Shown one piece after another: positions 51,870 to 64,000 of a stretch of 64,000 bases of DNA. Below the pieces are notes generated by a model. The model did no database searches and had not been told where the DNA came from. It was given only the letters and a program-made list of their open reading frames with translations. The stretch comes from Macrostomum lignano. Its lineage: Eukaryota. The position numbers and the translations under genes were made by a program. The stretch is taken from assembly GCA_002269645.1 (NCBI GenBank), contig NIVC01002977.1:63909-127908 (forward strand), given 5' to 3'. The stretch's first letter is position 1. Each line of letters opens with the position of its first letter.

Positions 51870-52453
51870 CTGGGGTGAGTTTCCTTGTGGCTTTGAGCTG
51901 GGGTGAGTTGCCTTGTGGCTTTGAGCTGGGGTGAGTTGCCTTGTGGCTTTGAGCTGGGGTGAGTTGCCTTGTGGCTTTGAGCTGGGGTGAGTTGCCTTGT
52001 GGCTTTGAGCTGGGGTGAGTTTCCTTGTGGCTTTGAGCTGGGGTGAGTTGCCTTGTGGCTTTGAGCTGGGGTGAGTTTCCTTGTGGCTTTGAGCTGGGGT
52101 GAGTTGCCTTGTGGCTTTGAGCTGGGGTGAGTTGCCTTGTGGCTTTGAGCTGGGGTGAGTTGCCTTGTGGCTTTGAGCTGGGGTGAGTTGCCTTGTGGCT
52201 TTGAGCTGGGGTGAGTTGCCTTGTGGCTTTGAGCTGGGGTGAGTTGCCTTGTGGCTTTGAGCTGGGGTGAGTTGCCTTGTGGCTTTGAGCTGGGGTGAGT
52301 TTCCTTGTGGCTTTGAGCTGGGGTGAGTTGCCTTGTGGCTTTGAGCTGGGGTGAGTTGCCTTGTGGCTTTGAGCTGGGGTGAGTTGCCTTGTGGCTTTGA
52401 GCTGGGGTGAGTTGCCTTGTGGCTTTGAGCTGGGGTGAGTTGCCTTGTGGCTT
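51870..52453. repeat. 28-bp minisatellite, right block, truncated mid-unit
   Basis: About 21 units ending at ...gtggctt and followed by AGTAG. Confidence 0.97.
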
Positions 52454-52492
52454 AGTAGAAGGCATGAGGGGGCTTTTGGGACAAAATTTTTC

Positions 52493-52707
52493 ACGTCCTC
52501 CATAATCCCATTAAATCCATCTATATTATCCCTGACAGAATCAGAAAAAAAGGGGGGTCGCACTCGCTAACAAAACGTCCTCCATAATCCCATTAAATCC
52601 ATCCATATTATCCCCGACAGAATCAGAAAAAAGGGGGTCGCACTCGCTCACAAAACATCCTCCATAATCCCATTAAATCCATCCATATTATCCCTGACAG
52701 AATCAGA
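52493..52707. repeat. ~81-bp subterminal direct repeats (about 2.6 copies) of the Maverick
   Basis: acgtcctccataatcccattaaatccat... at 52493, 52575 and 52655. Confidence 0.85.
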
Positions 52708-53563
52708 GCATAACAGGTGTCCTACTGTTATGCTCTGAGGGTTTATGCTCTGAGCATAACAGCTCCAAATCCACCCATAGCATCTTCGAAACAATCAGAA
52801 AATAATCTGCATTCTTCTCCCCACATTCAATCCGCAACGTGCTACCAGATCCCTAAGACTTTAAATCCCCTAACCCAGGGTCCTTACCCTTTGAAAAAAA
52901 AATCTAAATTTTCTCTAAAAATGTTTCCAGTTGTCTCCCCAGGTTCTTATTACAAAGCGCACGAGCCTAATTACAAGAGTAAGTACCAATGCAAACTAGA
53001 ATGCAGCGAGTACATGAGAAAATATTGGCCCGGCGTTGATATCAATGTCCCTAATATTAATCTAGCTCTCCAAAGACACTGGTTCAGAACACAGCTGAGA
53101 AAATTTGCTTAGTCATGCTAGTAAGAGTTTGGCTCTGCATGAAAGGTACAATCGTTGATGGTAATTTCACTTAAAACAAAGAAAAGAAAGAAAGCAGACC
53201 TTATTTATTAATTGTTAAATAAATACCGTACCGTAATACGGTACCGAAAATACCGTATTGTAGTTGGAGTTTATTCTATGAAGCTTTGAATTTTTATTTA
53301 TCGAAATTTTGTAATAAATAGAATAACAATGTTTTACATAAACAAAAACAAGAATGATTATTAATTGGTGGTACTTCTAAAATTGTCTACAAGTTGCTCT
53401 AAATTTATATTAGAAGGAAGGTTATCTAACAAACCTACAGTATCCTCTCTACATATCCCACATTTTCTCGTGTTATTACTTGAAGTAAGAATTTCTAGTC
53501 ATATTACTTATAAGTAGGCTCTAAACAACTTGACGCCATTCTGGACTGTCTCGGAAAAACCAC

Positions 53564-53640
53564 ACATGATTTTCTCTAACGTGTTAGAAAAAATCATGTA
53601 CACACATCATTTTCTCTAACGCGTTAGAAAAAATCATGTG
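53564..53640. other. Two tandem ~38-bp imperfect palindromes
   Basis: acatgattttctctaac-gt-gttagaaaaaatcatgt repeated twice. Confidence 0.8.
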
Positions 53641-53951
53641 CGCCCAGTACGTTCAAGGCCGTCTCCCCAGCTGGCCTTGGGTACCTCGGTTTCAGAGAAA
53701 TCTCTCTCCCACGCCAGTGTACGCTTTCTGTTACACTCCGCTATTCTTAACACACAACCTTGGCGACAACCTCTTCATGCCTTTCTTGCCTTGCCCCCCC
53801 CCCCTAGTGGTATCTAGTGGTAAGTGATATCTTACCACTTCTCTCTACACTCTATGAAAATATTAATACTTATGAAATCTTAACACAACAAACAATAACC
53901 TAAAGGACTTGTCAATAAAATGCCTGAATAAATATTAGAGTGTTGTCACCG

Positions 53952-61760: not shown

Positions 61761-61764
61761 GGGT

Positions 61765-62294
61765 TCATTGTGCATTTCTCGTTGTACTTCTCGTTGTCCT
61801 TCTTTCCACATAATGTTGAAGAACTTTCTCGAGTTCATTTCTCAGCTGACTCATGTCATCAGTACCGACCATGTTCAAGTTCATTCGAATTGATTGTTCA
61901 TAAAGATCCTGAATGGTTTTGAACTCATCCTCTGAAATGAACTTATCCTCGATTGCCCTTGAAATGTACCCTATGATTGATGTGTGCACCCCTTTCTCTT
62001 TTACTTGCTTCTCCTGTAGCTGCTTTAGTTTTTTTCGCCTGTTTCGCGCTACTGCTCCAGTAATTGCTGAAATAAGTCCACATGCAGCACCCACAGAGCC
62101 GAGGGGATTGCGATTGGGGCTGTGATGACTGGCAACACTGAGACAGCTGCAGCAGATCCAGATAGAACAGACACAGATCCTAGAATCATATTGCTGTAGT
62201 CGAAAAATTTACAGTGGCTGTCATAGCGCTTAATTTTCTTTGTGTTGTGGAAAATATTTTTTTCAAGATCATCGCGCATTTTTTGAATCTCCAC
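61765..62294 (-). pseudogene. GasderminX-like hydrophobic-hairpin protein, one apparent -1 frameshift at ~62100
   Basis: Joined frames give ...GSVSVLSGSAAAVSVLPVITAPIAIP/LGSVGAACGLISAITG...KKLK...ISRAIEDKFISEDEF, matching the ISKALxDxxISxxEF pattern I recall for adintovirus GasderminX. The shift sits in a 4-base G/C run. Confidence 0.6.
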
Positions 62295-62529
62295 TAGTCG
62301 AAACTGTTGAGAGTTACAAGTAATGACGGGTAGAGTTTTTGTTGCTCATATTGGGGTGCACTAGGTGCACTAGGTGTTGTGGGAGCGTTCGGATCATAAA
62401 GAGAATTTTGAGCATCCATTTTTTAGGGAATTTTTTAAAAAAAATCGGCAACTATAGTTGGTGGTGGTTAGATTTGTTTTACGGTTGATTGCTTCGTCTG
62501 CAGTGACGGCAACAGGTCTCTGAATCTGC

Positions 62530-63273
62530 CTATTCATTATCTGTGAGCTCCATTCTACGCATGATCTCAAACAAGTCGGTTGGATCACTTGTTTCCCTTG
62601 TGGTCTGTGGTGCCTCTTCAGCGTCAATGTTTTTGAGATTATGCAAGCGTTCAAGACGACCGATTCTTCTCACCGATTTCTGCCATTCGGTAAAAACTAA
62701 ATCTACAAAGACTTTATTTGCAGTAATTCTTACTTTGATTTGATCATGCAACGCTGTTGACTGAGTCATGAACTCTTCTAAATTCCTCACTTTACCTGTG
62801 TTGGTTGCGACGTTTTCTTTAATTCTATCATGCAACGCTGTTGACTGGTTCATGAACTCTTCTAAATTATTCACTTTAGCTGTGTTTGTGAAAACTCCTT
62901 CTTCAAGAATGCGCATCCGCCTATCAATGGAGTTTCTCAGAAGATTAATTGTCGATGCTAAATTTGTTCTTAAACCGTTGATTTGCGAGACTGCCGAAGT
63001 TATTTCTGACCTTAGTTCATTAGTTGCGTGTACAACCTGTACATAAAGCTTATCACTTTCAAACTTCTGCCTGGCTACTTTTATGCGGAGATCTTCTATG
63101 TTTATCTGTAGCTGGTGCATGGAGCGCTCTAATTGTTTCAGTCTGTTTTTATTCAGTTTGATCTCTGGGATCTTTTCGTCGCTGTGATATAATCGCCTGT
63201 CAAGTATGGATATTTGAGCTGATGTAAGAGCGCTGTTGCCAGAAATGGATTCACCTGCAAAGTTTATTGACAT
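62530..63273 (-). CDS. Coiled-coil protein (putative fibre/structural), 247 aa, with internal 28-aa duplication
   Basis: Heptad-rich sequence; 84-bp tandem duplication (period seen at 62745 and 62829). Confidence 0.65.
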   Translation of the reverse strand: MSINFAGESISGNSALTSAQISILDRRLYHSDEKIPEIKLNKNRLKQLERSMHQLQINIEDLRIKVARQKFESDKLYVQVVHATNELRSEITSAVSQINGLRTNLASTINLLRNSIDRRMRILEEGVFTNTAKVNNLEEFMNQSTALHDRIKENVATNTGKVRNLEEFMTQSTALHDQIKVRITANKVFVDLVFTEWQKSVRRIGRLERLHNLKNIDAEEAPQTTRETSDPTDLFEIMRRMELTDNE

Positions 63274-63289
63274 CTTTTAATAGCAAATT

Positions 63290-64000
63290 TTAAATTACAG
63301 TTCTTTTTTCTTTGCTGATAATCACAAACTGGTAAGGCTGATTCCACTTGTCATAGCAAAGATTAACGAATTCCTCTTGTGAAATCTTTCTGCTTGAGTT
63401 TTTTGTTGGATTTATGAAATAGGCAGGCGCAATGACCTCATTGTAAAATCTTTTTAACCTGTCCTGTGGAATGGTTGGAAACAGGAGAATCAGATTGCAG
63501 TTCCCGCGAATTGTTTTGTTCGGGAGCTCGAACCAGTTCTGTGCAATGTAAATTACATTACAATTGTTATGTCGTCCTCTTGTAAAATAGTTTTCTATCT
63601 GCTTCTGTGGGCCTGTCATACAATCATCAAAGACGATCAAATGCTTTCTCCCTTTTCTAGCTCATCTGGTTGGGGTAGAAGTTTGGTCTTTGGATCAGCC
63701 TGTGGATCTCCATAGGTGAACACTTTAATGTTCTGCCATTTTTCATTGTCTTTGAGGTGCTTTGAATATTCAGCAGCTACAATTTCTGGGTTACTGGAAG
63801 GCTCATTTGGTTATTAAAACATTCAATAATGTCCTCTTTGTTCAGCTTGTTTTGAAACCCTGATCAAGCATTCTATACTCATCTTGATACAGTGTGGGAG
63901 AGTAGATGTGCAGAGTGTCATAGTCGATAAAGCCAGTCTAAGAAGCATGTTAAAGACTCTGAATGTTTACCTGAACCTGATGAACCAACAACAATGCATC
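63290..64000 (-). pseudogene. A32/FtsK-like packaging ATPase (5' end outside the window), five apparent -1 frameshifts
   Basis: CIVVGSSGSGK[T] Walker A at ~63998-63966; IDYDTLHIYSPTLYQ; LIVFDD Walker B; YFTRGRHNNCNVIYIAQNWFELP..TIRGN (arginine-finger region). Confidence 0.9.

What the first reader, a model, noticed from the sequence alone, without database searches (positions are those of the whole stretch)
52448..64000. Adintovirus-like Maverick sitting in a host RNase T2 intron, with a predictable right junction
Seen: the satellite breaks mid-unit after TGGCTT and AGTAG begins, followed by subterminal repeats and a full replication/packaging gene set. Known: Mavericks start with AG/AGT repeats, have long TIRs and make 6-bp TSDs. 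Prediction: beyond the window lie capsid genes, the inverted copy of 52454 onward ending in CTACT, then TGGCTT and resumed 28-bp units, then the RNase T2 CAS II exon. An endogenous DNA virus inside an innate-defence-associated nuclease gene is notable.
Basis: partly seen in the sequence, partly recalled or inferred. Interest (0 to 1): 0.74.

Follow-up and report, generated by a model that had tools for sequence, protein, structure and literature searches.

The report
Flatworm Maverick fragment beside RNase T2
The last 11.5 kb of this flatworm (Macrostomum lignano) contig is the left part of an integrated adintovirus-like Maverick element lying just after the first exons of an RNase T2-like gene, but the contig stops inside the element, so the predicted right junction cannot be seen; this is an ordinary member of a well-known class.

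Summary
A 28-bp satellite stops at 52453 (...TGGCTT), one base short of a full unit. AGTAGA follows at 52454, then 2.7 copies of an 80-bp subterminal repeat. The genes after that match PLA2-like, rve integrase, adenovirus pX-like, protein-primed PolB, adenain-like protease and an A32-type packaging ATPase.

"Adintovirus-like Maverick" is supported. Three spliceable exons 2.5-3.5 kb upstream encode the first third of an RNase T2 (CAS I region). The satellite starts at the last exon's 5' splice site.

Three things reduce the finding:
- The window is the last 64,000 bases of contig NIVC01002977.1 (Macrostomum lignano Mlig_3_7), so base 64000 is the contig end. There is no "next 5-15 kb". The right TIR, the TSD, the capsid genes and the CAS II exon all remain untested, and "intron" is an inference.
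- As assembled, the copy is not intact. PolB has 2 frameshifts and 1 stop, the ATPase has 5 frameshifts, and a membrane-protein gene has 3. Some of these may be long-read consensus errors.
- Mavericks are common in animals, including flatworms, and most copies are degraded.

Verdict: a new member of a known kind, of low to moderate interest.

The parts
48932..49043 (+). Host RNase T2-like exon A: signal-peptide-like stretch and the conserved N-terminal region. The 5' boundary is approximate, and no ATG is in frame, so a further upstream exon is expected.
   Evidence: AG acceptor and GT donor read. It is part of the 79-aa spliced peptide that matches Pfam Ribonuclease_T2.
49777..49826 (+). Host RNase T2-like exon B, carrying the CAS I histidine motif (..FNIHGLW, followed by A instead of the usual P).
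   Evidence: It aligns to S-RNase SF11 (1ioo), E=1.8e-5.
49915..49990 (+). Host RNase T2-like exon C. Its last 9 bases and its 5' splice site form the first unit of the 28-bp satellite.
49982..50800 (.). 28-bp satellite, block 1 (29.2 copies, 97% matches). Every unit repeats a GGTGAGT donor-like motif.
   Evidence: GGTGAGT occurs 50 times across both blocks.
50801..51868 (.). Unrelated 1,068-bp non-autonomous DNA transposon that splits the satellite. It has 7-nt terminal inverted repeats and a candidate 3-bp duplication of CTG.
51869..52453 (.). 28-bp satellite, block 2 (20.9 copies, 98% matches), the target of the Maverick insertion. Its last 6 bases, TGGCTT (52448-52453), are the candidate left copy of the target-site duplication.
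52454..52716 (+). Left terminal region of the element. It begins with the end motif AGTAGA, followed by 2.7 copies of an 80-bp subterminal direct repeat (52493-52707). This is the presumed outer part of the left TIR.
   Evidence: End motifs of Mavericks are taken from PMC8097293.
52717..54075 (.). AT-rich stretch with little coding capacity, including a tandem pair of 40-bp palindromic units (53561-53640). It may be inner TIR or regulatory DNA.
54076..54813 (-). Open 245-codon ORF of unknown function, predicted to be all-helical. It is treated as an accessory gene.
   Evidence: The AF2 model is of low confidence (pLDDT 38).
55251..55637 (-). Phospholipase A2-like ORF (parvovirus-VP1-type PLA2 domain with an HD..Y motif). 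There is no ATG upstream of the domain in frame, so its status is uncertain.
   Evidence: Pfam PF08398, E=1.3e-6, 29 bits against a cut-off of 23.9. PLA2-like genes are an Alpha-adintovirus hallmark (PMC8502044).
55769..56806 (+). Retrovirus-type (rve) integrase. It is open, with the D, D and E catalytic residues conserved.
   Evidence: Pfam PF00665, E=4e-10. There are 0 frameshifts and 0 stops against two relatives at 51% identity. Alignment.
56823..57269 (+). 148-codon ORF with an adenovirus pX/mu-like core-protein motif. It is open.
   Evidence: Pfam PF05829, E=4.2e-7, 30.2 bits against a cut-off of 25.
57538..61278 (+). Protein-primed family-B DNA polymerase gene with its conserved N-terminal extension. 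It is broken. The polymerase body has 2 frameshifts and 1 in-frame stop against the closest full-length relative, and the N-terminal extension has 1-2 more frameshifts.
   Evidence: Pfam PF03175, E=2.4e-18. 6210 homologues, best 44-45% identical. Break counts.
61362..61760 (+). Adenain-like cysteine protease. It is open, with H, D, Q and C motifs present.
   Evidence: Pfam PF00770, E=4.4e-4 (20.4 bits, just under the 21.3 cut-off). The top three PDB hits are adenoviral proteases, best E=0.0077.
61816..62419 (-). Gene for a small membrane-type protein conserved next to the ATPase in the closest relative. It is broken by 3 frameshifts and has 0 stops.
   Evidence: Frameshift-aware alignment to the 230-aa product of L004 (45% identity). 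tblastn E=4e-37.
62530..63273 (-). Open 247-codon coiled-coil ORF with an internal 84-bp duplication. It occupies the same position as the 225-aa ORF in the relative L004.
63290..64000 (-). A32/FtsK-type genome-packaging ATPase. It is broken by 5 frameshifts (0 stops) and cut by the contig end, with about 29 N-terminal codons missing.
   Evidence: 689 homologues, best P0124 at 74% identity. The homologues match Pfam Pox_A32. 78% identity over 223 columns, with break counts.

Best explanation
Window 52454-64000 is the left ~11.5 kb of an integrated Maverick/Polinton of the animal 'adintovirus' type, with the Alpha-class PolB of pfam03175. It lies in the genome of the flatworm Macrostomum lignano.

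Shown:
- The element starts at 52454, at a sharp break in a host 28-bp satellite, with an AGTAGA end motif and subterminal repeats.
- It carries a PLA2-like ORF, an rve integrase with an intact DDE triad, a pX-like core protein, protein-primed PolB, an adenain-like protease, two small morphogenesis-side genes and an A32-type packaging ATPase.
- The satellite it inserted into begins at the 5' splice site of the third visible exon of an RNase T2-like gene on the same strand.
- The sequence stops inside the ATPase because the contig ends there.
- As assembled, PolB, the ATPase and one neighbouring gene are interrupted.

Inferred from the family:
- A linear double-stranded DNA with terminal inverted repeats was joined to the chromosome by the element's own integrase, duplicating a few target bases (candidate TGGCTT).
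- Copying would be by the protein-primed polymerase. Packaging would be by the ATPase into a capsid matured by the protease.
- The capsid genes and the right repeat would lie in the unassembled remainder.

Whether the site is an intron of a complete RNase T2 gene is also an inference.
For: Junction, end motif and subterminal repeats.

Gene identities:
- One search gives PF03175 (E=2.4e-18), PF00665 (E=4e-10), PF05829 (E=4.2e-7), PF08398 (E=1.3e-6) and PF00770 (E=4.4e-4).
- One search finds adenain structures as the top PDB hits.
- Searches show the ATPase has 689 homologues that carry Pox_A32.
- One search shows the integrase D, D and E residues are invariant.
- One search shows the PolB relatives are the animal Maverick type (sponge, snake, coral, brittle star).

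Local gene order ATPase, coiled-coil gene, membrane gene is shared with the closest relative, L004.

The gene set matches the published adintovirus definition (PMC8502044) and the published Maverick end motifs (PMC8097293).

Host gene. Source and contig end.
Against: - No right end, no inverted copy of the terminus, no TSD and no capsid gene can be seen, so three defining features are untested.
- The protease hit is just below Pfam's cut-off.
- The OTU-like nature of the PolB N-terminal extension could not be shown.
- About 1.4 kb after the terminus has no recognisable gene, so its belonging to the element rests on the end motif alone.
- The PLA2-like ORF lacks an in-frame ATG upstream of its domain.
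Confidence: 0.82

Rival explanations
1. The copy is essentially intact and recent. Most of the interruptions are consensus errors of a long-read assembly in a repeated element at a contig end, not mutations.
For: - 10-11 of the 11-12 breaks counted are frameshifts and only one is a stop.
- Eight of the ten frameshifts examined are of the 'one base missing' type.
- Frameshift density is highest in the last 700 bases before the contig end, with 5 in the ATPase, which otherwise stays 78% identical in protein to a relative and has no stop.
- The assembly is PacBio/Canu polished only with short reads (PMC5730564), and such polishing works poorly in multi-copy DNA.
- The integrase, pX-like gene, protease and coiled-coil gene are open.
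Against: - PolB carries an in-frame stop.
- The frameshifts are not next to long homopolymers.
- The coiled-coil gene lying between two broken genes is uninterrupted.
- 96% of vertebrate Maverick loci are degraded (PMC8097293), so decay is the default expectation.
Confidence: 0.3
2. The element is not in an intron. The three RNase T2-like exons are a truncated gene fragment or pseudogene, and the Maverick lies downstream of it in repeat-rich intergenic DNA.
For: - Only Pfam profile positions 1-64 of 188 are encoded.
- No CAS II-like motif exists in the window.
- No in-frame ATG is seen for exon A.
- The CAS I motif reads HGLW-A rather than the usual HGLW-P.
- No protein in the 5.8-billion-cluster collection shares words with these exons, although other genes of this contig are on record.
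- The genome is highly duplicated (PMC5730564), which favours decaying copies.
Against: - All three exons have canonical splice sites and join in frame.
- Exon C ends in a consensus donor site, implying a following exon.
- The published annotation deliberately dropped transcripts overlapping repeats, which could explain the missing gene model.
Confidence: 0.35
3. Position 52454 is not the Maverick terminus. The gene-poor stretch 52454 to about 54000 is a different repeat, and the Maverick is a 5'-truncated fragment beginning further in.
For: No recognisable Maverick gene lies before 54076, and no second copy or right TIR is available to confirm the terminal sequence.
Against: - The first bases after the satellite are AGTAGA, 5 of 6 of a published Maverick end motif.
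- Subterminal tandem repeats follow directly.
- TIRs of up to about 1.4-1.5 kb are documented.
Confidence: 0.1
4. The junction is an assembly chimera: a long read joining satellite DNA to an unrelated Maverick copy.
For: The join lies 11.5 kb from a contig end in a genome in which tandem repeats and transposons make up more than half of the DNA.
Against: A chimeric join would fall at a random place in the element. This one falls exactly at a canonical end motif.
Confidence: 0.04

Closest known systems
Alpha-class adintoviruses (reference: Mayetiola barley midge adintovirus; Starrett et al. 2021, PMC8502044)
   Same: Animal host, pfam03175-type PolB with a conserved N-terminal extension, rve integrase, FtsK/A32-type ATPase, adenain-like protease, PLA2-like gene and a pX-like core-protein motif.
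   Different: - The PLA2-like domain and the pX-like motif are in separate ORFs on opposite strands, not fused as PLA2X.
- The OTU fold of the PolB N-terminus is not demonstrated.
- Hexon and penton genes are not visible.
- The copy is integrated and, as assembled, broken.
- PolB is only about 44% identical to the nearest database proteins.
Vertebrate Mavericks (Barreat and Katzourakis 2021, PMC8097293)
   Same: The same core genes and an end motif of the (AGT)2 type: AGTAGA here, a 5 of 6 match. Most copies are degraded there, and this copy is interrupted too.
   Different: - The gene order differs.
- The host is a flatworm.
- The TIR pair and the 6-bp TSD could not be observed.
- The PLA2-like and pX-like genes are not among the eight vertebrate core genes listed there.
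Polintons of nematodes and other invertebrates (Jeong et al. 2023, PMC10748475); Maverick expansions in planarians (Dugesia preprint 10.64898/2025.12.11.693146)
   Same: Self-synthesising DNA element of 13-25 kb with pPolB, integrase, protease and ATPase. The class is already reported from flatworm genomes.
   Different: No report for Macrostomum was found in the searchable library. This lineage's nearest ATPase relative (78% identical in protein over the 223 aligned residues) is an environmental contig, not a named host.

Membership tests
Maverick/Polinton | Protein-primed family-B DNA polymerase | tested here: met
   PF03175, E=2.4e-18, 66.7 bits against a cut-off of 25.8. 6210 homologues. 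The gene is interrupted.
Maverick/Polinton | Retrovirus-like (rve) integrase | tested here: met
   PF00665, E=4e-10, above the cut-off. It is open, and D, D and E are invariant in the alignment with two relatives.
Maverick/Polinton | Adenovirus-like cysteine protease | tested here: inconclusive
   PF00770, E=4.4e-4, but 20.4 bits is below the 21.3 cut-off. The top three PDB hits are adenains, best E=0.0077. H, D, Q and C motifs can be read in the ORF. This is probably met.
Maverick/Polinton | A32/FtsK-type packaging ATPase | tested here: met
   689 homologues at E<=1e-3, and five of seven tested match Pox_A32 above the cut-off. The Walker A and B regions are visible. The gene is interrupted and cut by the contig end.
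Maverick/Polinton | Major (double jelly-roll) and minor (penton) capsid protein genes | not testable with these tools
   No candidate lies in 52454-64000. The remainder of the element lies beyond the contig end.
Maverick/Polinton | Terminal inverted repeats | not testable with these tools
   No inverted copy of the left terminus exists in the window, and the right end is not assembled on this contig.
Maverick/Polinton | Target-site duplication (5-8 bp, usually 6 bp) | not testable with these tools
   The left flank ends in TGGCTT, but the right flank is not available.
Maverick/Polinton | AG- or AGT-type end motif | tested here: met
   The element begins AGTAGA at the first non-satellite base. 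Published motifs are (AGT)2 and (AG)3 (PMC8097293). The match is 5 of 6, at one end only.
Adintovirus (Alpha class) | OTU-like domain fused to a pfam03175 PolB | tested here: inconclusive
   The pfam03175 part is met. The N-terminal extension is conserved in relatives but gives no significant Pfam or PDB hit. The AF2 model is poor (pLDDT 53).
Adintovirus (Alpha class) | PLA2-like membrane-active gene and pX-like core-protein domain | tested here: met
   PF08398 (E=1.3e-6) and PF05829 (E=4.2e-7) are both above their cut-offs. Here they lie in two separate ORFs rather than one PLA2X gene.
Adintovirus (Alpha class) | Animal host | tested here: met
   The contig is NIVC01002977.1 of GCA_002269645.1, Macrostomum lignano.
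RNase T2 (host gene) | CAS I active-site block | tested here: met
   ..FNIHGLW, followed by A, is encoded across exons B and C. PF00445, E=2.2e-9, 38.1 bits against a cut-off of 26.
RNase T2 (host gene) | CAS II active-site block and the C-terminal two thirds of the domain | tested here: not met
   These are absent from all six frames of the window. Only profile positions 1-64 of 188 are encoded. They may lie beyond the contig end.

The most novel reading that the evidence does not exclude
The interruptions are mostly assembly errors, and this is a young, nearly intact Alpha-adintovirus-like element in Macrostomum lignano, a transparent laboratory flatworm with established genetics. It would be inserted in an intron of an expressed RNase T2 gene and polymorphic among lines. 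That would give a tractable animal in which the natural history of such an element could be described: copy number, insertion polymorphism, transcription and the effect on host splicing.
Probability: 0.12. Interest if true: 0.55.

Novelty: new member of a known kind. Interest (0 to 1): 0.3.

Why it matters
This adds a documented adintovirus-like Maverick, with a base-exact left junction, to the genome of a flatworm model species for which no such element was found in the searchable literature. The locus also shows how repeat-rich this genome is: a satellite grown from an exon's splice donor, then hit by two different mobile elements. It does not change what is known about Mavericks, and the suggested link to innate defence through RNase T2 has no support here. 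Its practical value is as an annotation. It also flags that the contig ends because of this repeat, and that gene breaks close to the contig end should not be taken at face value.

Tried and rejected
- **Reaching the DNA beyond base 64000.** Exact-product look-ups of four window ORFs found nothing (and the RNase T2 peptide search). The look-up of an upstream host gene showed why: the window ends at the contig end.
- **Looking for sibling copies or closer relatives with both ends.**
  - The viral-contig scan with PolB found nothing.
  - The metagenome scan with an ATPase alignment gave 68 loci, all at most 44% (most 25-41%) identical, and the four longest or best-matching ones tested have no terminal inverted repeats.
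  - Contigs L001 and L002 (PolB 44% identical) have no TIRs.
  - The Sycon locus L005 is a spliced gene model without TIRs.
- **Structure prediction.** Single-sequence models of the 245-codon ORF and of the PolB N-terminal ORF reached only pLDDT 38 and 53, so no fold search was run.
- **Assigning the frameshifts to homopolymer errors.** They do not sit next to runs of 5 or more, so this stays open.
- **Considered and rejected.**
  - The RNase T2 exons are not part of the element: they have introns and lie 2.5 kb outside it.
  - No capsid gene is hidden in 52717-55250: the region has no long ORF and no similarity to relatives' proteins.
- **Papers not held.** The original Polinton paper and the 2015 review could not be read. 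End motifs and TSD lengths are cited from PMC8097293 and PMC10748475 instead.

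
Full report
**1. Observation**

Tandem Repeats Finder reports a 28-bp satellite at 51869-52453 (20.9 copies, 98% matches) and the same satellite at 49982-50800 (29.2 copies). The array ends ...GCCTTGTGGCTT at 52453, 27 bases into a 28-base unit. The base expected next is T, but the sequence reads AGTAGAAGGCATGAGG from 52454.

An 80-bp unit follows, repeated 2.7 times at 52493-52707 with 94% matches. The terminal 29-mer is unique in the window on both strands. No inverted copy of the terminal region exists in 52300-64000.

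**2. What the element encodes**

Pfam matches:

| Feature | Family | E-value | Bits vs cut-off |
|---|---|---|---|
| Phospholipase A2-like domain, minus strand, 55251-55637 | PF08398 | 1.3e-6 | above |
| rve integrase, 55769-56806 | PF00665 | 4e-10 | above |
| Adenovirus pX/mu-like motif, 148-codon ORF, 56823-57269 | PF05829 | 4.2e-7 | above |
| Family-B polymerase of the organellar/viral type | PF03175 | 2.4e-18 | above |
| Adenovirus-protease-like ORF, 61362-61760 | PF00770 | 4.4e-4 | 20.4 vs 21.3, just below |

- **Protease.** Its three best PDB matches are adenoviral proteases, best E=0.0077.
- **ATPase.** The ORF at the window end has no Pfam hit of its own. It has 689 homologues in the 1.84-billion representative library, the best 74% identical. 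Five of seven homologues tested match Pox_A32 above the cut-off.
- **Integrase.** It aligns end to end with two relatives (48% identity in that MAFFT alignment; 51% over the aligned columns), with the catalytic D, D and E invariant.
- **PolB.** The longest open stretch has 6210 homologues. The best are 44-45% identical, and the named ones come from a sponge, a snake, a coral and a brittle star.
- **Closest relative of the right-hand part.** This is a 3.1-kb environmental contig (L004). It has the same local order, ATPase then a coiled-coil gene then a small membrane-type gene.
- **Not present in the window.** No capsid gene is visible.

**3. Classification**

The published definition of adintoviruses lists:
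- an animal host;
- polinton-type PolB with an N-terminal OTU-like domain (Alpha class = pfam03175);
- rve integrase, FtsK-type ATPase and adenain;
- hexon and penton;
- for the Alpha virion module, a PLA2-like gene with a pX-like domain (PMC8502044).

The window meets every item that can be tested, apart from three caveats. The protease hit is borderline. The OTU fold could not be shown. The PLA2-like and pX-like parts are in separate ORFs.

Polintons are 13-25 kb, with TIRs of 100-1500 bp and TSDs of 5-8 bp (PMC10748475). Vertebrate Mavericks have 6-bp TSDs and end motifs (AGT)2//(ACT)2 or (AG)3//(CT)3 (PMC8097293). AGTAGA at the first non-satellite base is a 5 of 6 match to the first motif. 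The label "adintovirus-like Maverick" is therefore supported, and 52454 is very probably the true left terminus.

**4. Where the window comes from, and why the prediction cannot be checked**

A 760-residue chromodomain/ankyrin protein encoded at 27765-30047 is on record from contig NIVC01002977.1 (127,908 bp) of GCA_002269645.1. The fetched locus is identical to window 17765-40047. Record coordinate therefore equals window coordinate plus 63,908, and window base 64000 is the last base of the contig.

NIVC00000000 is the Mlig_3_7 assembly of the flatworm Macrostomum lignano. The contig ends inside the packaging ATPase gene, as assemblies often do in multi-copy DNA. The right TIR, the TSD, the resumed satellite, the capsid genes and the CAS II exon are reasonable predictions that remain untested.

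**5. State of the genes**

I compared the window DNA with relatives' proteins using a frameshift-aware alignment and report counts only.

| Gene | Frameshifts | In-frame stops | Note |
|---|---|---|---|
| PolB body | 2 | 1 | against the closest full-length relative |
| PolB N-terminal extension | 1-2 | 0 | |
| Packaging ATPase | 5 | 0 | 78% protein identity; about 29 codons lost beyond the contig end |
| Membrane-type gene | 3 | 0 | |
| Integrase | 0 | 0 | checked by alignment |
| Coiled-coil gene | 0 | 0 | checked by alignment |

The pX-like ORF, the protease and the 245-codon ORF are open; this comes from the ORF list, not from comparison with relatives. The PLA2-like ORF has no in-frame ATG before its domain.

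As assembled, then, this copy could not supply its own polymerase or ATPase. A caveat applies:
- Almost all breaks are frameshifts.
- Eight of the ten frameshifts examined look like a single missing base.
- They are densest in the last 700 bases.
- The assembly is PacBio/Canu polished only with short reads (PMC5730564).

Part of the damage may therefore be consensus error. The frameshifts are not next to long homopolymers, and one break is a stop codon, so the question stays open. In vertebrates, 96% of Maverick loci are degraded.

**6. The host gene**

On the plus strand, three exons with canonical AG/GT borders (about 48932-49043, 49777-49826 and 49915-49990) join in frame to a 79-residue peptide. 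The peptide matches Pfam Ribonuclease_T2 (E=2.2e-9, 38.1 bits against a cut-off of 26, profile positions 1-64 of 188). It also matches plant T2 and S-RNase structures (best E=1.8e-5).

The peptide includes the CAS I block, read as HGLW followed by A rather than the usual P. No CAS II-like motif is present in any frame of the window, and no in-frame ATG precedes exon A. No protein in the large collection shares words with these exons, although neighbouring genes of the contig are on record.

The element lies 2.46 kb downstream of exon C, in a satellite that starts at that exon's donor site. Two readings remain about equally open: an intron of a complete gene, or repeat-rich DNA behind a truncated copy in this highly duplicated genome. 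Nothing here links the gene to defence in this animal.

**7. How it most likely works**

Shown: the gene identities, the sharp left junction, the end motif and the intact integrase catalytic residues.

Inferred from the family: a linear double-stranded DNA with terminal inverted repeats was inserted by its rve integrase into the satellite, duplicating about 6 target bases. Replication would be protein-primed by PolB. Packaging would be by the A32-type ATPase into a capsid cleaved by the adenain-like protease. The PLA2-like and pX-like proteins would be virion components. I put 0.82 on the identity and left boundary, about 0.5 on "intron", and about 0.3 on the copy really being intact.

**8. 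Novelty and score**

Mavericks and adintoviruses are widespread in animals, and Mavericks are already reported as an expanded repeat class in planarian flatworms. No mention for Macrostomum was found. This is a new member of a known kind, truncated by the assembly and at least partly broken. Interest is 0.3.

Noticed in passing
window 49982-50800 and 51869-52453: The 28-bp satellite begins inside the last 9 bases of RNase T2-like exon C, and each unit repeats the exon end plus its 5' splice site. GGTGAGT occurs 50 times, so the array is 50 tandem copies of a donor-like site directly after a real donor.
   Followed up: partly
window 50801-51868: A 1,068-bp insert splits the satellite. It has 7-nt terminal inverted repeats (CCCGTTG...CAACGGG), a candidate 3-bp duplication of CTG, and many subterminal GGCAyrAAAGGTG-like motifs in opposite orientation in its two halves. 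This is the look of a non-autonomous DNA transposon.
   Followed up: partly
window 40071-40144 (+): A mir-8/mir-200 family microRNA precursor (Rfam RF00241, 51.5 bits against a gathering score of 47, E=2e-8).
   Followed up: no
window 11042-22292 (+): A Syk/ZAP-70-like gene with two SH2 domains and a split tyrosine-kinase domain. A 25-bp satellite of 93.6 copies (19446-21742) lies between its kinase exons.
   Followed up: partly
window 24771-26402 and 27759-30047 (+): Two neighbouring GC-rich (about 70%) genes with ankyrin repeats. The second also has a chromodomain and is on record as a 760-residue product of this contig.
   Followed up: partly
window 1-10000 and 31000-37000: Very AT-rich blocks (27-36% G+C) alternate with 50-72% G+C gene and satellite blocks. 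At least nine different minisatellite families (periods 16-32 bp) occur in 64 kb, in line with the 15% tandem-repeat content reported for this genome.
   Followed up: no
window 63290-64000 and locus L004: The nearest relative of the ATPase (78% protein identity once frameshifts are allowed for) is a 3.1-kb environmental contig (ENA ERZ27299534), not an animal genome record. A close relative of this flatworm element is therefore present in some sampled environment or unrecognised host.
   Followed up: partly
window 53561-53640: Two tandem 40-bp units, each itself a near-palindrome (37-nt arms, 89% complementary), lie in the gene-poor stretch after the left terminus of the element. Their function is unknown.
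   Followed up: no
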